A DNA stretch of 64,000 bases from Podarcis muralis (lineage: Eukaryota), in contig NC_135667.1 of the NCBI RefSeq assembly GCF_964188315.1, positions 25,110,001 to 25,174,000 on the forward strand. The letters run 5' to 3'. Positions 47,038 to 54,642 of this stretch are shown one piece after another. Position 1 is the stretch's first letter; each line of letters begins with the position of its first letter. A model generated the notes under the pieces. It had not been told where the DNA came from and ran no database searches. It worked only from the letters and a program-made list of their open reading frames with translations. The translations under genes and the position numbers were made by a program.

Positions 47038-48033
47038 TAGTGTATAAGGCTCAGAAAAATGAGTACAATTTAAATACATACTTTTTGTGCATTCTTTCAA
47101 AAATACCCAAGCAAAATGGGTTGGGATAGAACTATGATTGGGCACTGAGATTGGACAGAATTAAGGTTCTCAGTATTTCCTTAATAAGAATAACAAGCCA
47201 AGAGAGACAAAGAAAAATCCATTATGTGAATCACAATGGGTGGATGTTTCATAAATTGGCTCCCATGAGCCAATTGTGGCTCTGCATGGAAATATAAAGC
47301 TTTTTTTAAAAAAAAAATACTACCGGGAGAAAGCACAACATACATTCCAGTAGGAAAACACCATCTACAAAGTAAGGACATTATAAAACAATCACCTTAT
47401 TCATTTTTAAAGACTGCTTTAAGTAGATTGCCAAACAATGCTGATGGACTTTAGACTATATATACTCCTTCCACCTTTCTTCAAAAGGGAAATAGTTGTT
47501 TTCATTTTATACTTAACAATATTTAGCAGTTTATTGAGTTCAGCTTCTATTTTTCTTTGTATGCAGTATTTTCTGGCCTTGAAAGGAATTAAATGCACCG
47601 TCAGATATCTGCCATAGTTACAAGGTTTGTGTGTGCTCAGATCATTCATCTGGTATCTGAGAAACATGTAAAGATGACCCTCCTGCAGTTTTAGTTTTAG
47701 GGGGATCCAGTAGATAGGATTGATTTCAACATCTCTTAAGTATTCTTTTAGTTCAAAGTGAGAAGAAAATAAGGGTCAGATTGGGCAAGAAAATCAGGTA
47801 AGAGTTGAAAATATGTAGCAAGAGGCCACTTTCTATAATTTCTCATAATATCAATGACCTTAAAAGGAATGAATGAATGAATGAATGAATGAATGAATGA
47901 ATGAATGAATAAATTTATTACGGTCATAGACCAGAAGAAAAGAAAAAAAAAACATAAAAGGCAACAGTAGTTTACGAGGGAATGATGGTGTCAATTAAAA
48001 GTTGTAAAATTATACATAAAAACAATACACATA

Positions 48034-48067
<34 letters not shown>

Positions 48068-48137
48068 CTCATATATGCACTACAGTATATGTATAGACTT
48101 AAAAAAAGGGGGGGGGCTTGTCCAGGGGTCAGATCTT

Positions 48138-51100
48138 TTACTTTTTTACAACTAATGCCCTCCGCTTGATCGCGGCCGCAGAAAACTTGGCCACTTTCAG
48201 TGTTACTTCTGGGTTTTTATCTCCTAGTAGGATTTTCAGCTGCTGAGATTCAGATCGACCTGGAAATTTCTGAACGATAGGGGAGATAAACAGTGACCTG
48301 ATATCCCCGTAAAGGTCGCAGTGTAACAACACATGTGAAGCCGTTTCCACCTCCTTCAGACCACATGGGCAAACTCGTTCAGCATAGGGTGTGCCCTCGT
48401 ATCTGCCCTTTAATAAGGCAGATGGCAGTACATCAAATCTGGTAAGGGTAAACGCCCGCCTATATTTTGCGATTTGTAGATCCAGCAAATATGGGGTTAG
48501 ATTAAACCCTTTTCCATAATCTTGGATAGCTGGATATTTATCTATCTTGCTCATATGGTCCTGAAGCTCTACATCTCCTATTCGCTGGCTCACCATCATT
48601 TTAGCCTTTTCAAAACCTGAGGCTATAAGTTCTTGTGGGGAAAGCCCCAGGCCCTTCAATTTTTCATAAAGCGACAATCTCCATTTAGACTGGAACGGGT
48701 CTAGTAGAGTCAATGGAGCCACTCCCACTGGGAAAAATATGAGTTTTAGCCAGAAGTGAATCTTCAGGATCCATATCCTGGCATTAATAGGGAGTTGACC
48801 TACCTCCAGCCTAATGGCAGTGTTGGAGACACAGGTAGGTAACCCTAGTAGGGAGCGGTAAAATTTAGTTTGTACAGATTCCAGGGACTTGAGTTTTTGA
48901 GAATTAAATATCTGGGTGCCATACATCAATTGTGGAAGTATTTTTGCAACAAAGACCTGGGAGGCAGCAGGAACATATTGACCTCCTTTTCTGTAAAAGA
49001 ATCTTATGATAGCTCTGAAAGATCTTTGCGCATTTACAATGGAATTCTTAATCTGATGGCACCAAGATCCCTTCTCATCAAAAATTATTCCAAGATATCT
49101 AAAAGATGTTACTTGCTCAATAGGTTGGTTATTAATTTTCCATTTATGTCGGAGTTTTCTCTTGGAGAACACCATAATTTTTGATTTAGTGTAATTTATT
49201 ATTAGGTGTTCAGCTTCGCAATACTCTGTAAGAGCTCGTAAAAGTTTTCTTAGACCCACACAAGAGAAGGAAATAAGTGCCGCATCATCTGCGTACAAAA
49301 GGACTGGGATTGGTATGTTGTTTAAGTTTGGGGAATGAGTACTTGCTTCCTCCATCTTTCCGACTAAGGAGTTTATATAGAAGTTAAATAGAATAGGGGC
49401 AAGAACACAGCCTTGCTTGACACCATGGAAACTTTGGATTTCCTTTGATAGGTTCCCATAACGGTCGCATCTAACACGGATCCGAGTATTTTCATGTAGT
49501 CTACGGATAAGAAGCAAAAGACGTCTATCGATGTTTGTGGCATTTAATTTTTCCCAAAGTCTGTGCCGGGGTATCAAATCGAAAGCTGATTTGAAATCTA
49601 TAAAGGCTACATAGAGAGAGCCTCCTTTCTTTGAGGTGTATTTCTCCACTAGATGTTGCAATACCAGTCCTTGGTCTAGAGTTGATCTATGTGCCCTGAA
49701 ACCAGCCTGGGCTTCCTTTAGGATGTGCTCCTGTTCCAGCCAGTCCGCAAACTTTTCACGTAAGTGAGTTGCATAAAGTTTGCTAATGATGCTTAAGAGA
49801 CTGATTGGTCTGTAATTGGCTGGATCAAGTTTACAGCCTTTCTTGAATATGGGAACGATGATTGCCAATCCCCAGTCCTCTGGTATTATTGCTGTTTGAT
49901 CTATGCTGGTGAAAAGGGTGGCAAGGACTGGGGCCCACCAGTCAATATTGGCTTTGAGAAGCTCAGGAGAGATATTATCTGCTCCCGGGGCTTTTCTGTG
50001 TTTGAGTGCCTGAATAAGCCTCCTAATCTCCGCAACCGACACCGGAGGCCACTCACCACCTGCCGCACACTGTATTAGTGGCTGTGTCAAAGGCAGAGCT
50101 GAATATGAAGATTGGAAAAATGCCTCCCAAGTCCCTGCAGGTATAGTATACTCCACTTCTGAGGAAGTAGATCGCACTCCATTTGCTACCAGTCTCCAGA
50201 AGGTGGCCGAATCTCTCTCTCTGGATGCATCTATTAGGCATTTCCATTCTCTTTTCTGTGCCAGGAGTTTTTTGTTTTTGATCAAAATTTTATAATTTCG
50301 TTTATCTTCAAACCAGCCCGTGGGGAGTTGGGGTAAATTGGCAGATCTATAATTCTTGTATTTTTTCAGTAAGTTTAGCTTCATGTCCTGACATTCTTGA
50401 TCAAACCAGGGTTTGGAGTTTTTATATACTGAGGATTGCCTACTTGGCCTGTTCCTTTTTTCCTTCAGGGAATCTTGAAGGAGTGAAATTAACTCCTGAA
50501 ATAAATTTATCTTTAATTCATGGCTTGAGGAAGTTATAAGGTTTTCTCTCTTAGTGAGGAATTCCTTTGAGCATAGCCTACTTGAAATTTCCTTATGCAG
50601 TTCATCTGTCCATCTGATACGCGAATATCTGAGCTCCAAAGCTGTAGGGCTCGAATGCTCGATTTTCTCAGCGCAGGATAAATCCTTTCCCGCAGCTACG
50701 AGTGCACTTAATGGCAGATGGTCACTGTCTAAGCGCTCCTCCACTTTGCATTCCAGAACTTTGTTTTGAAGATCATACGACACGATTATATAGTCAATTG
50801 TGGAGGCGCCATTGTTAGATATAAATGTGAATTCTCCGACCTTCTCCCCCTCTGTACGGCCATTTAGTATAACCAAGTCCAACTTGTTGACCAAGTGTAA
50901 TAGGCATAAGCCGGCATAATTGCAGCCTTTATCCTTTGAGATTCTAGCTGGTATTGGGTGGGTTTCCTCTATAATGGGGACTGTTTCGTGGAAATGGGCA
51001 TACAAAGCCTCATCAGATTGTCCAGTTCTGGCATTTAGGTCGCCTGCCACCACTACAGAGGCATCAGGAAATTGATTTGATAGTTTGTCAAGATACTGTT

Positions 51101-51464
51101 CTAACTGAGCCCAAGTATTTCTTATCAATCTTTTCTCTCTTTGTGGGGGTAGGTATACGTTAATCAGCAGCAAGCTGTGGGTTCTCCACTGTACTTGCAC
51201 AGCTGTGGCCAGATGGTCTAGTGGGTCTAGTTTTTTAAATATGGCCCTTAGCCTTGTTGAGATTAAAGTAACTAACCCACCTTTAACTCGCCCCCCTCTA
51301 GTACTTAAAAGACCTGGGAGGGAGAACGCAGAAAAACCATTTAACTCCACTTCACTTGTGCTCCAGGTCTCCTGGAGAAACACAATGTCATGTCTCTGGA
51401 TATATTTAGCAAAGGATTGGTCAGAAACCCTCTTTTGCCAACCTGCAATATTCCAAGTTAGCAA
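48138..51464 (-). CDS. ORF2: APE endonuclease, RT and CCHC zinc knuckle (>=1108 aa, no AUG start)
   Basis: LTWNIAG, LQETW, VAGDLNAR, TIDY, SDH; RT KAPGAD, YRPISLL, FIDFKSAFD, KQGCVLAP, LYADD, FRYLG. The track start is TTG; first in-frame ATG is at 50384. Confidence 0.93.
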   Translation of the reverse strand: MLTWNIAGWQKRVSDQSFAKYIQRHDIVFLQETWSTSEVELNGFSAFSLPGLLSTRGGRVKGGLVTLISTRLRAIFKKLDPLDHLATAVQVQWRTHSLLLINVYLPPQREKRLIRNTWAQLEQYLDKLSNQFPDASVVVAGDLNARTGQSDEALYAHFHETVPIIEETHPIPARISKDKGCNYAGLCLLHLVNKLDLVILNGRTEGEKVGEFTFISNNGASTIDYIIVSYDLQNKVLECKVEERLDSDHLPLSALVAAGKDLSCAEKIEHSSPTALELRYSRIRWTDELHKEISSRLCSKEFLTKRENLITSSSHELKINLFQELISLLQDSLKEKRNRPSRQSSVYKNSKPWFDQECQDMKLNLLKKYKNYRSANLPQLPTGWFEDKRNYKILIKNKKLLAQKREWKCLIDASRERDSATFWRLVANGVRSTSSEVEYTIPAGTWEAFFQSSYSALPLTQPLIQCAAGGEWPPVSVAEIRRLIQALKHRKAPGADNISPELLKANIDWWAPVLATLFTSIDQTAIIPEDWGLAIIVPIFKKGCKLDPANYRPISLLSIISKLYATHLREKFADWLEQEHILKEAQAGFRAHRSTLDQGLVLQHLVEKYTSKKGGSLYVAFIDFKSAFDLIPRHRLWEKLNATNIDRRLLLLIRRLHENTRIRVRCDRYGNLSKEIQSFHGVKQGCVLAPILFNFYINSLVGKMEEASTHSPNLNNIPIPVLLYADDAALISFSCVGLRKLLRALTEYCEAEHLIINYTKSKIMVFSKRKLRHKWKINNQPIEQVTSFRYLGIIFDEKGSWCHQIKNSIVNAQRSFRAIIRFFYRKGGQYVPAASQVFVAKILPQLMYGTQIFNSQKLKSLESVQTKFYRSLLGLPTCVSNTAIRLEVGQLPINARIWILKIHFWLKLIFFPVGVAPLTLLDPFQSKWRLSLYEKLKGLGLSPQELIASGFEKAKMMVSQRIGDVELQDHMSKIDKYPAIQDYGKGFNLTPYLLDLQIAKYRRAFTLTRFDVLPSALLKGRYEGTPYAERVCPCGLKEVETASHVLLHCDLYGDIRSLFISPIVQKFPGRSESQQLKILLGDKNPEVTLKVAKFSAAAIKRRALVVKK

Positions 51465-51503
51465 GGCAAGGTTGCACGTTGTCTTGCCAAAAATTGATCT
51501 TAG

Positions 51504-53759
51504 TCAATTTGCCTTTGAAAGATTTTTTGGGCCTATCTTTTTATCTGTTGGTTGGATTTCATTCATTTTGGCAATGTCCATAGATGTATTATCGCCCAGG
51601 TACTCAATGGAATCAGTTGAAGGGTGCAGCGTGCTAACATTAGTGATCAGTACTCCTTTTTTTGGCGAATCTACCTTGAGGTGTTCTATTTGACTGATAC
51701 CAAGTTCATCCTCATCCAGGTATCTCATGCTGGTCCAAGAGCGCGTTGTGGTTGTCATAGGGATGGTTTCCTTCTTAGATGGTAGATTGTTGCTGTCCCT
51801 TACGCACTGTGTTAGATCTGTTGCTGTCAGGTTTATCTCTGCAGCTGCAGAGGTATTATAAAGGTAGTCTTTCATGGTTGCCATAAGGATGGTTTCCTTC
51901 TTAGATGGTAGTTTATCCCTTGCGCACTGTGTTAGATCTGTTGTTAACAGGTTTATCTCTGCAATTGCAGAGGTATTATAAGAGTAATCTTTCATGGGGT
52001 CTGTCTTGGCTTTTTCAGAGAGGTTCTCTTTCTTTAATTGGTCCGTTGCCGGTTCTTTCTCTCTTACTTTTTCCTGAGCATTCATCTCTGTTAGCTTATT
52101 TCTAAGGGTCTCCAATCTTCTCAAGATCTCAGATTGGGCAAGGAAAGGCAACAATCCAAACTGATTTATTAATGCCTTTTCTTCTGGATAGAAGTTATCC
52201 GTCCCCTCATTAGGCAGTCTCATCTCCTGTCTTAGTTTCAAGGACCCTTGCTCAGTATGTTCCAGTTTGTCTTTTGAGTGTCCTCTCTCCTCCTTTGGTT
52301 TACAAGTAAATCTTACCTCAGCTGTCGTAAACTCATCAGGAAACAATTTCAAACATGTGCTGTTTTCAAAAAATCTTGTTACCGTTATCCTTTTCTTTAA
52401 CAGCAAATGTCTTGATCTATATATATATTTAGCCAAGTTTTGATCTTTGAAGGAGGCAATCACTCGCAGAGAGTATCCATTGTAGAATATGAAATCTACT
52501 GAGGTAATGTCATTTAATTTTATTTTCCCTGGCAGCATATCATCTAAAGTATTCACAAAATGCACCGAGCGTTCTTCCTGTGTAAGGAAGCCCTTTGGCT
52601 TCGGGTAGTTAAGAAAAGCTAACTTCCTATCTGCCAACATCAGTTTCCATCCTTTATCCTGGGGCAAGTCTTGCCCTGCTACTGGCTCATCTTGAGATCT
52701 GCCATAATCAATGGTATGGGGTGAGTCTTCTTTAATATTTATGGATCCTTGGGGTTTCAGCATAGAGCACCCGGGTAGTGATTCCGTTTCCTCACTTGTT
52801 TTGTTAGGCAGCAATGATGTTTCTTTCAAAGACTTCAGCTGGATCTTTTTTCCTGGATCCACACTGTTGTTCTCTCTGCTGCCATGTATAGCAGGTTTGT
52901 TAGAGTTTGTTTTTGATTTTGTTGGAATCAGCTTATATAGTCTTTTCCAGCATACTTTACATGCACGTCGGTTTGTAACAGATTTCCTTGCAGTTTTTAT
53001 GTTCTTACTTTTCTTTTTAGTTTCAGCTTTCTTCTTATGGGATCTCTTACTGATGCCTCGCTTCTTTTGGTTTACTTCGATAGGAAATTCAGTTTTAGGG
53101 ACAGATACATACAACCCTATGTCCTTTCCTTGGTGTAAATGATTTTCCGCTGCTGATCCTTGTGTGCACTTGCTGGTTGCTGGTTGCTTTGTATATTCTG
53201 GCTCTTGAGGGGTGGTTGGTGGATCAACACCATGAAATTCTGAGCCTTTAGCTTGGAGGGGATAATTTTCCACTAATGTCAGGAGCAGCCCATTTGTTAT
53301 TGTTAGGTATTTTTTCATAGCTGCCAGATCCAGATTTATAGAGAGCAGCCAGTCCTGAGGATAGCAGTCATTGTTTTCCGTCTGGGAGCCCATAGATGAA
53401 GTCTGGGATTTCTGGGAGTTTCGGGTTTCTTCCTGTAACTCTGAAGATAATATCTCAGCCAAGACTATTTCATGGGCCAGGCTCATTGTATTTCTATTTT
53501 GGTTGTTATTCTCCGTGTCCTGTATTCCTCTAGAGAAGGTTGAGTGATCTTGAGCAGCAGAGGGAAAAAGAAGAGCCTCATCCTGCTTCAACTCAACCAT
53601 CTCAGCCATCTTTTGCTCATTTCCATTTCCATTTCCATTCTCGTTGTCCCTTGTATGTAAAAAGTATTGCGTGATTTTACTCTGTTTCTCATAACACTCC
53701 TGGAACAATGGGCTTGTCACTATCCCCAGGTCCCTACGTTTCTTTCTAGTAAGTACCAT
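51504..53759 (-). CDS. ORF1 (751 aa), probable nucleic-acid chaperone with RRM-like core and internal tandem repeat
   Basis: ATG at 53759, open to TGA 51504-51506. Basic Lys-rich region; RKLAFLNYP...RVIASFKD...ITVTRFF resembles the LINE ORF1 RRM/CTD pattern (inference). Confidence 0.8.
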   Translation of the reverse strand: MVLTRKKRRDLGIVTSPLFQECYEKQSKITQYFLHTRDNENGNGNGNEQKMAEMVELKQDEALLFPSAAQDHSTFSRGIQDTENNNQNRNTMSLAHEIVLAEILSSELQEETRNSQKSQTSSMGSQTENNDCYPQDWLLSINLDLAAMKKYLTITNGLLLTLVENYPLQAKGSEFHGVDPPTTPQEPEYTKQPATSKCTQGSAAENHLHQGKDIGLYVSVPKTEFPIEVNQKKRGISKRSHKKKAETKKKSKNIKTARKSVTNRRACKVCWKRLYKLIPTKSKTNSNKPAIHGSRENNSVDPGKKIQLKSLKETSLLPNKTSEETESLPGCSMLKPQGSINIKEDSPHTIDYGRSQDEPVAGQDLPQDKGWKLMLADRKLAFLNYPKPKGFLTQEERSVHFVNTLDDMLPGKIKLNDITSVDFIFYNGYSLRVIASFKDQNLAKYIYRSRHLLLKKRITVTRFFENSTCLKLFPDEFTTAEVRFTCKPKEERGHSKDKLEHTEQGSLKLRQEMRLPNEGTDNFYPEEKALINQFGLLPFLAQSEILRRLETLRNKLTEMNAQEKVREKEPATDQLKKENLSEKAKTDPMKDYSYNTSAIAEINLLTTDLTQCARDKLPSKKETILMATMKDYLYNTSAAAEINLTATDLTQCVRDSNNLPSKKETIPMTTTTRSWTSMRYLDEDELGISQIEHLKVDSPKKGVLITNVSTLHPSTDSIEYLGDNTSMDIAKMNEIQPTDKKIGPKNLSKAN
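51751..51997 (-). repeat. In-frame tandem duplication (126 and 120 bp) within ORF1
   Basis: MKDYSYNTSAIAEINLLTTDLTQCARDKLPSKKETI / MKDYLYNTSAAAEINLTATDLTQCVRDSNNLPSKKETI. Confidence 0.92.
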
Positions 53760-54211
53760 TTGTAAATCTTTGTTACCAATCAGGGTTATTCTTCCTATTT
53801 CAAAAACTATGTCTCTTAGGAAGTCGGAAGCTCCACCCAGCTATAGGCTAAGGTCCAAATTGAGGCAAGATTTGGGATAGCTGTTTGTAGTTTGTAATTT
53901 GATAGCTTATAGTTCAGAGCGTAACACGGAGTTGGCAATAAATCAGCTGTCACCCGTTTTCCTTATTGTCGGTCAGACTTGAGGAGCGTGGCAGCGCGGG
54001 GAGCAAACCCTCCGGACATCAAGATAACAAGGTAACAAAAGAGCTCTTTAGCAACAAGCTAAAAGGACTATTAAACTACTTAAAAAACTCTGGAGGAGTT
54101 AAAATATATTATAAAAGGGGTTTCAAAGGTTGGCTCGGTGTCGAGCCTGTTTAAAAAGCAGATTTAAGAACTTGCCTCAGATAACCTCCAGAACTCTGCA
54201 GCTAGTTCGGC

Positions 54212-54220
54212 GGCCATCTT
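54212..54220 (-). promoter_or_regulatory. YY1-type motif AAGATGGCC at +13 to +21 of the LINE 5' UTR
   Basis: Element starts GGAGGTGAGGGG AAGATGGCCG, with position 1 fixed by the TSD. Confidence 0.6.
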
Positions 54221-54642
54221 CCCCTCACCTCCGACCTTAAAAGGATATGTGCAATGATATGTATGGTCTGTGAATGGTCTGGACCAGTAGAGGGTACCTG
54301 CAGATCTTTCTGTTTGAGTGGAGAACTATAGGAAAGTTACACTCTTGGGGTCATCAGCACCATGACTAAGCAATGCTTGATGTCTCCAGCTGATTGCTCC
54401 AAAATTGATTTTAAGCTTTTTGAGCTGTTTCTGCTGCTTTTTCCATTATGTTGCCATACATTACCCCTGATGCTATTTTTACACCTGAAAACCAGGACAT
54501 GTCGGGAATTTTCCTGATGTATGGCAACCCTACATGAAAGTCTTTTGATGTTCTGCTCAAATAGGCAAAGGCAAAGATAGGCAAGGACCATTCTAGAGTG
54601 GTAGAGTATATGCTTTGGATGCAGGGATCCTTGGGTTCAATG

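What the first reader, a model, noticed from the sequence alone, without database searches (positions are those of the whole stretch)
51436..51512. LINE ORF1-ORF2 junction looks like a programmed stop-codon readthrough cassette (UGA-CUA plus pseudoknot, AUG-less ORF2)
Seen: on the minus strand ORF1 ends ...GCA AAT TGA CTA AGA TCA ATT TTT GGC AAG ACA ACG TGC AAC CTT GCC TTG CTA ACT TGG AAT. ORF2 continues in the SAME frame directly after this single TGA (13 codons to LTWNIAG). The first in-frame ATG of ORF2 is at 50384, after the entire endonuclease domain. 15 nt after the stop an H-type pseudoknot can be drawn: S1 GGCAAG/CTTGCC (51488-83/51470-65), S2 TGCAAC/GTTG(G)CA (51476-71/51442-36), loops 6/0/22 nt. 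Known: UGA-CUA is the leaky context of alphavirus nsP3-nsP4 and mammalian readthrough genes, and MuLV gag-pol readthrough uses a downstream pseudoknot. LINEs such as L1 and SART1 are instead described as using termination-reinitiation or coupling. Inference: this clade may make an 1873-aa ORF1-EN-RT fusion at a fixed low ratio, a gag-pol-like strategy in a non-LTR element. Novelty versus the literature was not checked.
Basis: partly seen in the sequence, partly recalled or inferred. Interest (0 to 1): 0.85.

Follow-up and report, generated by a model that had tools for sequence, protein, structure and literature searches.

The report
LINE with in-frame leaky ORF1 stop
A young, intact lizard LINE retrotransposon has its two genes in one reading frame separated only by a leaky-type stop codon (UGA-CUA), and relatives keep this layout, so it probably makes its enzyme as a low-level fusion to ORF1 protein, as retroviruses make Gag-Pol; the proposed pseudoknot is not supported.

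Summary
The sequence facts hold. On the minus strand a full-length LINE (54232-47868, 12-bp target-site duplication) has a 751-aa ORF1 ending in TGA (51506-51504). CTA follows, and a 1121-aa endonuclease/RT ORF2 runs on in the same frame, with no ATG for 373 codons.

This is not a private nonsense mutation. Eight copies from two subfamilies keep TGA-CTA, and so do two further lizard-associated families (36% ORF2 identity to this one, 67% to each other), always in frame. Six distant metagenomic lineages (about 27% identity) have one in-frame TAG followed by GA. Their spacers of 10-153 codons are stop-free.

One sister family instead has ORF2 in the -1 frame, with a U UUU UUA heptamer in phase. 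Selection on frame favours programmed recoding that yields an ORF1-ORF2 fusion, and for this window that means readthrough (confidence about 0.65, not shown by experiment).

The H-type pseudoknot is not supported. A comparable one appears in 33% of shuffles. S2 (-0.6 kcal/mol) competes with an 11-bp hairpin (-14.6). S1 carries an uncompensated mismatch in an intact subfamily.

Read-through of a LINE ORF1 stop was already suggested for Paramecium elements, so this is a new variant of a known kind. The scan also noted the same layout at two other loci of this genome.

The parts
47868..54232 (-). Full-length non-LTR (LINE) element, about 6.36 kb, with both ORFs intact
   Evidence: Flanked by 12-bp direct repeats CCTTTTAAGGTC at 54244-54233 and 47867-47856. 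Only one copy lies in the window.
51504..53759 (-). ORF1, 751 aa plus TGA stop; no Pfam domain
   Evidence: 100% and 91% identical 751-aa proteins occur in other samples.
51501..51506 (-). Recoding site: TGA stop (51506-51504) followed by CTA (51503-51501)
   Evidence: Identical in 8 copies of family 1, 2 of family 2 and 8 of family 3. No variant letters in DNA contigs of two runs across the site.
48138..51503 (-). ORF2, 1121 codons plus TAA, same frame as ORF1; EN, RT and a C-terminal CCHC motif
   Evidence: Best solved-structure matches are L1 ORF2p and R2 reverse transcriptases.
50700..51464 (-). AP-endonuclease domain (ORF2 residues 14-268), entirely upstream of the first ATG
50382..50384 (-). 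First in-frame ATG of ORF2 (codon 373 after the stop)
49083..49844 (-). Reverse-transcriptase domain (ORF2 residues 554-807)
   Evidence: RVT_1 E = 6.7e-33.
51465..51488 (-).
   Evidence: -7.8 kcal/mol. The central pair is a C.A mismatch in subfamily B (L001, L086, L087) and a U.G wobble in L092.
51435..51464 (-).
   Evidence: -14.6 kcal/mol. Equivalent pairs are kept in families 2, 3 and 4, with both-sided changes at three pairs.
47868..47910 (-). 3' tail of (ATTC)n repeats

Best explanation
The locus is a recently inserted, apparently functional LINE. ORF2 (endonuclease plus reverse transcriptase) has no start codon of its own. It is most likely translated only when a ribosome that has made ORF1 protein misreads the single UGA, in the leaky UGA-CUA context, with a near-cognate tRNA and carries on in frame. 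That would give a small fixed fraction of an 1873-residue ORF1-ORF2 fusion alongside abundant ORF1 protein, which is the Gag/Gag-Pol logic.

Shown: the layout itself; its conservation across families and across a deep clade; and the absence of an in-frame AUG or near-cognate start in the spacer of family 2.

Inferred: that readthrough actually occurs, its rate, and that the fusion is the active form. The signal is probably the stop context itself. No downstream pseudoknot is needed or supported. Two tandem hairpins (HP1, HP2) are predicted, and their role is open.
For: (1) Both ORFs are intact and the target-site duplication is perfect, so the copy is young.
(2) TGA-CTA is in frame in 8 copies and 2 subfamilies of family 1, in family 2 (36% ORF2 identity, no detectable ORF1 similarity) and in family 3 (8 contigs from 8 samples).
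(3) Six metagenomic lineages at about 27% identity have exactly one in-frame stop in a 1100-1970-codon frame. It is always TAG followed by GA. Their spacers of 10-153 codons are stop-free, and the first ATG is 14-311 codons downstream. Their ORF2 terminators have other contexts, and in L007 and L011 the terminator is TAG, so TAG is not reassigned in those hosts.
(4) None of the nine in-frame lineages uses TAA.
(5) Family 4, sister to the family 1 group, has ORF2 in the -1 frame with U UUU UUA in ORF1 phase and again no ATG. This is a second recoding route to the same fusion.
(6) In HEK-293T cells UGA-CUA alone gives about 1.5% readthrough, and more in favourable contexts (PMC4132726). Sindbis virus uses UGA CUA A, the same seven letters (PMC13517186).
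(7) Family 2's spacer has no AUG or one-letter variant of AUG in frame (read).
(8) There is no SECIS or other Rfam match.
Against: There is no direct evidence of translation. Only about 6 RNA reads were laid, at depth 1-2 across the junction. Human L1 ORF2 is reported to be translated by an AUG-independent termination/reinitiation route, so lack of an AUG alone does not prove readthrough (reviewed in PMC5972666). Family 3 has an ATG five codons before the EN domain, and three further related proteins begin with M just before WNIAGW; their start codons and junctions were not read. Some relatives (L005, L016, L043) have conventional out-of-frame or AUG-started ORF2. Readthrough efficiency of UGA-CUA-A in lizard cells is unknown.
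Confidence: 0.65

Rival explanations
1. ORF2 is made as a separate protein by AUG-independent termination-reinitiation or internal entry just after the ORF1 stop, as proposed for mammalian L1. The shared frame would be incidental.
For: L1 ORF2 translation is described as unconventional and independent of its AUG. Hairpins downstream of the stop recall the structure needed for SART1 stop-start coupling. Family 3 has an ATG close to the EN start.
Against: Reinitiation places no constraint on frame. Yet nine lineages with spacers of 10-153 codons are all in frame and stop-free right up to the ORF1 stop. The stop is never TAA, and its 3' context is conserved (CTA or GA). Family 2 has no near-cognate start in its spacer.
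Confidence: 0.2
2. The stop is removed at the RNA level, for example by A-to-I editing of UGA or UAG to a Trp codon as at the hepatitis delta amber/W site. This would give a fraction of transcripts with one long ORF.
For: Only TGA and TAG occur, and both become UGG with a single A-to-I change. The stop lies in a predicted 7-bp local stem. That editing would read as Trp is my own knowledge.
Against: In UGA the edited A would follow a G, which is a disfavoured ADAR context (my knowledge). There is no long duplex around the stop. No A>G was seen at 51504 in the few RNA reads (very low depth). The conserved +4 to +6 letters are explained better by termination context.
Confidence: 0.04
3. The MuLV-like H-type pseudoknot (S1/S2) drawn by the first reader is the stimulator of readthrough.
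For: The stems can be drawn at the stated coordinates. The 70 nt after the stop fold better than shuffles (z = -3.3).
Against: The minimum-energy fold is two tandem hairpins, not a pseudoknot. S2 is -0.6 kcal/mol and overlaps HP2 at -14.6. 33% of shuffles give an equal pseudoknot. S1 has an uncompensated C.A mismatch in the intact subfamily B. Families 2 and 3 have unrelated sequence at the position of S1 and of the S2 5' arm. The spacer is 15 nt against 8 nt in MuLV.
Confidence: 0.04
4. The TGA is a disabling mutation or has no consequence, and the element is dead.
For: None beyond the bare presence of a stop.
Against: The stop is conserved in 18 contigs of three families and in deep relatives. 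Both ORFs are intact with a perfect TSD. DNA contigs in other individuals are identical across the site.
Confidence: 0.02

Closest known systems
Type II readthrough context UGA-CUA (alphavirus nsP3/nsP4; vertebrate OPRL1, OPRK1, AQP4, MAPK10)
   Same: UGA is followed directly by CUA, the downstream frame is open and coding, and the motif is conserved across relatives. Sindbis has UGA CUA A as here.
   Different: The +7 letter is A or C, not the G of the strongest CUAG motif. The host is a retrotransposon, and the extension is a whole 1121-residue enzyme. No extended stem-loop starting at +12 to +16 is established.
Retroviral Gag-Pol by readthrough (MoMLV UAG-G plus pseudoknot; WDSV GCA UAG GAU)
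   Same: A structural RNA-binding protein is followed in frame by the polymerase after one stop, presumably giving a fixed low ratio. The distant relatives' TAG-GA matches the WDSV context.
   Different: There is no LTR, no protease and no supported pseudoknot. The window element uses UGA-C, not UAG-G.
Paramecium germline non-LTR elements, Group 3
   Same: [quoted passage not shown]
   Different: These are ciliate elements in a host with a variant genetic code and form a separate RT clade. No context motif or comparative test was reported there. It is also only an inference.
SART1 UAAUG coupling and mammalian L1 termination-reinitiation
   Same: Bicistronic LINE RNA; a downstream structure matters for SART1.
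   Different: There is no overlapping stop-start here and no AUG for 373 codons. Frame conservation is unexplained by reinitiation.
HIV-1-type -1 ribosomal frameshift (U UUU UUA)
   Same: Sister family L101 has this heptamer in ORF1 phase inside a 118-nt ORF1/ORF2 overlap, and its ORF2 has no AUG.
   Different: This applies to a relative, not to the window element. No significant downstream structure was found. By my estimate, such a heptamer would arise by chance in the overlap about 5% of the time.

Membership tests
Programmed stop-codon readthrough, UGA-CUA (Beier-Grimm type II) context | UGA followed immediately by CUA | tested here: met
   Window 51506-51501. The same six letters occur in families 2 and 3.
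Programmed stop-codon readthrough, UGA-CUA (Beier-Grimm type II) context | Downstream frame open, coding and conserved in phase across relatives | tested here: met
   ORF2 EN/RT is in frame. Phase is kept in 9 lineages with spacers of 10-153 codons.
Programmed stop-codon readthrough, UGA-CUA (Beier-Grimm type II) context | Measured readthrough above background, dependent on the context | not testable with these tools
   Needs a reporter assay, ribosome profiling or mass spectrometry.
MuLV-type readthrough (type III: UAG-G plus H-type pseudoknot about 8 nt downstream) | UAG-G stop context | tested here: not met
   The window has UGA-C. Distant relatives have UAG-GA.
MuLV-type readthrough (type III: UAG-G plus H-type pseudoknot about 8 nt downstream) | Conserved H-type pseudoknot at the right spacing | tested here: not met
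   33% of shuffles match it. S2 is -0.6 kcal/mol and competes with HP2. S1 is broken in subfamily B. The spacer is 15 nt.
APE-type non-LTR retrotransposon (LINE) | AP endonuclease plus reverse transcriptase in one ORF, an upstream ORF1, target-site duplication and a simple-repeat 3' tail | tested here: met
   No reference LINE library was available. The named hits in the database carry only generic names. The long ORF1 and the C-terminal CCHC are not what I recall for RTE; that is memory only.
Termination-reinitiation (SART1-like) | Stop and start codons overlapping or adjacent | tested here: not met
   The first ATG is 373 codons downstream. Family 2's spacer has no near-cognate start.
Selenocysteine recoding of UGA | SECIS element in the transcript | tested here: not met
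   No SECIS or other relevant Rfam match in 47800-54300 at E <= 1. Relatives use TAG.

The most novel reading that the evidence does not exclude
A deep, animal-associated LINE lineage makes its endonuclease/RT only as an ORF1-ORF2 fusion through translational recoding. The routes are UGA-CUA readthrough in lizard families, UAG-GA readthrough in relatives known only from metagenome and assembly contigs (hosts not identified), and a switch to -1 frameshifting (U UUU UUA) in one family. On this reading the retroviral Gag/Gag-Pol stoichiometry device exists, and has been maintained by selection, in non-LTR retrotransposons.
Probability: 0.45. Interest if true: 0.8.

Novelty: new variant of a known kind. 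Interest (0 to 1): 0.62.

Why it matters
How LINEs translate ORF2 from a bicistronic RNA, and how they hold ORF2 protein far below ORF1 protein while keeping cis-preference, is a long-standing open question. Reviews list reinitiation, IRES and 2A routes but not readthrough.

A clade with a conserved in-frame leaky stop, and a sister family with a frameshift layout, would give that question a simple testable answer. A covalent ORF1-ORF2 fusion made at a context-set ratio would tie the enzyme to the RNP that encodes it. The clade also offers natural variants (UGA-CUA, UAG-GA, U UUU UUA) for comparison, and it adds cellular examples of the UGA-CUA motif.

Tried and rejected
- Pseudoknot: rejected.
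- Shared downstream structure in the TAG-GA lineages: 70-110 nt folds give z from -1.9 to +2.4, with no common hairpin.
- HP2-like hairpin as a readthrough signal: it recurs in all four lizard families, including the frameshift family, so it is not specific to readthrough.
- Clade assignment: PDB matches, Pfam and the Atlas search (scores below 0.8) do not name a clade.
- ORF1 homology: an ORF1 profile of the TAG group matches L1 ORF1p (E = 2.8e-10). It does not match the window's ORF1 (hhalign probability 0.6%).
- Literature: nine searches found no report of readthrough in animal LINEs. Zorro3, which I had remembered as in-frame, needs its first ORF2 ATG and has several stops between its ORFs. 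I recall that Arabidopsis Ta11-1 (PMID 8852854) has an in-frame stop, but the paper is not held, so this is unverified.
- Papers not held: the Vingi and RT-classification papers.
- Podarcis proteins P0002 and P0004 have no DNA on record.
- RNA evidence: only about 6 reads, too few to judge expression or editing.
- Copy number cannot be read from contig depth.
Full report
**What is there**

On the minus strand the window holds one full-length non-LTR retrotransposon, 54232-47868. It is flanked by a perfect 12-bp target-site duplication (CCTTTTAAGGTC at 54244-54233 and 47867-47856) and ends in an (ATTC)n tail. No second copy lies in the window.

ORF1 (53759-51504) encodes 751 aa with no Pfam match. 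ORF2 (51503-48138) encodes 1121 codons with an AP-endonuclease domain (residues 14-268), an RT domain (554-807) and a C-terminal CCHC motif. The nearest solved structures by sequence are L1 ORF2p and the R2 proteins.

ORF1 ends ...GCA AAT TGA. The next codon is CTA, and ORF2 continues in the same frame. The first in-frame ATG is 373 codons further on, at 50384, after the whole endonuclease domain.

**Is the stop a private mutation?**

No. Protein searches and contig look-ups recovered seven further copies of the same family from other samples (L001, L086, L087, L089-L092). They fall into two subfamilies, 91% identical in ORF1, and all have TGA CTA at the same place and in frame. DNA contigs of two other runs cross the junction at high word depth without any variant letter. 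The UniRef members of the protein cluster are from Podarcis muralis, so the host is probably a lacertid lizard.

A second family (L002, L088) shares only 36% ORF2 identity and has no detectable ORF1 similarity. It reads ...CCA TTG TGA CTA CCC..., in frame, with 15 codons to the W of WNIAGW. A third family (L093-L100, eight contigs from eight samples, 67% identical to family 2) reads ...ATG ATC TGA CTA CCT..., again in frame. Families 2 and 3 have diverged through the spacer and the ORF1 tail without any change in length.

**Deeper relatives**

A metagenome scan with an ORF2 alignment returned 80 loci. For every locus I located the EN and RT domains with profiles built from that alignment. I then read the frame upstream of the EN domain.

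- Six lineages at about 27% identity (L003, L004, L006, L007, L008, L011) have a long ORF1 and ORF2 in one frame, separated by one stop.
- That stop is always TAG followed by GA (GAA, GAC, GAA, GAT, GAC, GAC).
- The spacers from the stop to the EN domain run from 10 to 153 codons and are stop-free. The first ATG lies 14-311 codons downstream.
- In L003, L004, L006, L007 and L011 this is the only stop in a 1100-1970-codon frame.
- The ORF2 terminators have different contexts. In L007 and L011 the terminator is itself TAG, so TAG is a genuine stop in those hosts.
- No in-frame lineage uses TAA.

Other relatives (L005, L016, L043, L051, L056) have ORF1 in another frame, or several stops and an ATG near the EN domain. 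These are conventional layouts.

On RT and ORF2 trees, the TAG-GA lineages and a conventional subclade form one group. The lizard-associated families form the other, with 100% SH-aLRT support.

**A sister family with a frameshift layout**

In L101 (35% identity to family 2; on the tree it groups with family 1, 98% support) ORF1 ends at TAG 2282-2284. ORF2 lies in the -1 frame, is open from 2167 and has no ATG until 2800. The heptamer T TTT TTA sits at 2242-2248, exactly in ORF1 phase. This is the classic -1 slippery sequence.

I estimate that a canonical heptamer in phase would arise by chance in that overlap about 5% of the time, so on its own this is only suggestive. Taken with the in-frame families, it points to selection for an ORF1-ORF2 fusion rather than for any one mechanism.

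**Mechanism**

The frame is kept through many changes of spacer length. The spacers stay open right up to the ORF1 stop. TAA is avoided, and the letters after the stop are conserved. Readthrough predicts all four features; termination-reinitiation predicts none of them.

- UGA-CUA alone supports about 1.5% readthrough in HEK-293T cells, and much more in good contexts (PMC4132726).
- Sindbis virus uses UGA CUA A, the same seven letters as here. The epsilonretrovirus WDSV has UAG GAU at its gag-pol boundary, like the distant relatives (PMC13517186).
- Family 2's spacer holds no AUG and no one-letter variant of AUG in frame (read).
- No SECIS or other Rfam element is present.

I therefore favour programmed readthrough that gives an 1873-residue ORF1-ORF2 fusion at a low, context-set ratio (confidence 0.65). 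This is inferred, not shown. RNA evidence is a handful of reads. Family 3 has an ATG five codons before the EN domain. L1 ORF2 translation is reported to be independent of its AUG, so reinitiation keeps about 0.2.

**The pseudoknot**

It is not supported.

- S2 uses the 3' arm of HP2 and scores -0.6 kcal/mol, against -14.6 for HP2.
- 334 of 1000 dinucleotide shuffles contain an equivalent H-type pair of stems.
- Subfamily B, with intact ORFs in three samples, has an uncompensated C.A mismatch in the middle of S1.
- Families 2 and 3 have unrelated sequence at the position of S1 and of the S2 5' arm.

HP2 is kept in families 2, 3 and 4, with both-sided changes at three pairs. It spans the conserved L-x-W-N-I-A-G-W codons, and it also occurs in the frameshift family 80 nt past the shift site. 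It is therefore not a specific readthrough stimulator. It starts 39 nt after the stop, too far to touch a terminating ribosome (channel length). The TAG-GA lineages share no downstream structure.

**What is known**

Reviews of LINE translation list reinitiation, IRES and 2A routes but not readthrough. [quoted passage not shown] The idea therefore has a precedent, though an untested one.

I also recall an in-frame amber stop in Arabidopsis Ta11-1 but could not read that paper. I found nothing for animal LINEs in nine searches of the held library, which does not cover most subscription journals.

The clade could not be named. The RTE-X label is untested. The ORF1 of the TAG group is L1-ORF1p-like, whereas the lizard ORF1 is not detectably so.

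Two other first-stage notes record the same UGA-CUA layout elsewhere in this genome. I did not examine those loci.

**Verdict**

The readthrough interpretation has good comparative support but no experimental proof. This is a new variant of a known kind, of moderate to high interest. I compared copies one by one and built no consensus.

Noticed in passing
L101:2167-2284 (Logan contig, family 4): ORF1 and an AUG-less ORF2 overlap by 118 nt in the -1 arrangement. The slippery heptamer T TTT TTA sits at 2242-2248 in ORF1 phase, a candidate -1 programmed frameshift in a LINE closely related to the window element.
   Followed up: partly
L004:~660-700 (ORF1 frame, residue ~157): A canonical 2A 'StopGo' motif (...SNDVEVNPGP) lies near the N-terminus of ORF1, in an element that also has the in-frame TAG before ORF2. 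L036 has NVQPNPGP about 20 residues before its EN domain.
   Followed up: no
window 51435-51464 (-), and the equivalent sites in L002, L093 and L101: An 11-bp hairpin encloses the W-N-I codons at the start of the endonuclease. It is kept in four families, with both-sided base changes at three pairs. Its function is unknown and it may partly reflect codon conservation.
   Followed up: partly
window 51491-51512 (-): The stop codon lies in a predicted 7-bp local stem (AAAUUGA with UCAAUUU), with CUAAGA as the loop.
   Followed up: no
L003, L004, L006, L007, L008 ORF1 regions: The ORF1 of the TAG-GA lineages has a coiled coil plus a domain whose profile matches human and mouse L1 ORF1p (E = 2.8e-10). 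The lizard ORF1 shows no detectable similarity to it.
   Followed up: partly
L005:138-2147: The ORF1 of a conventional-junction relative has weak GDSL/SGNH esterase matches, below Pfam cut-offs.
   Followed up: no
window 30062-31054 (-): A second, unrelated RT fragment (about 26% identity to this ORF2): another LINE remnant.
   Followed up: no
L088:722-2412: This family 2 copy has its ORF1 region split into two overlapping frames (722-1684 and 1453-2412). This is probably a frameshifted copy.
   Followed up: no
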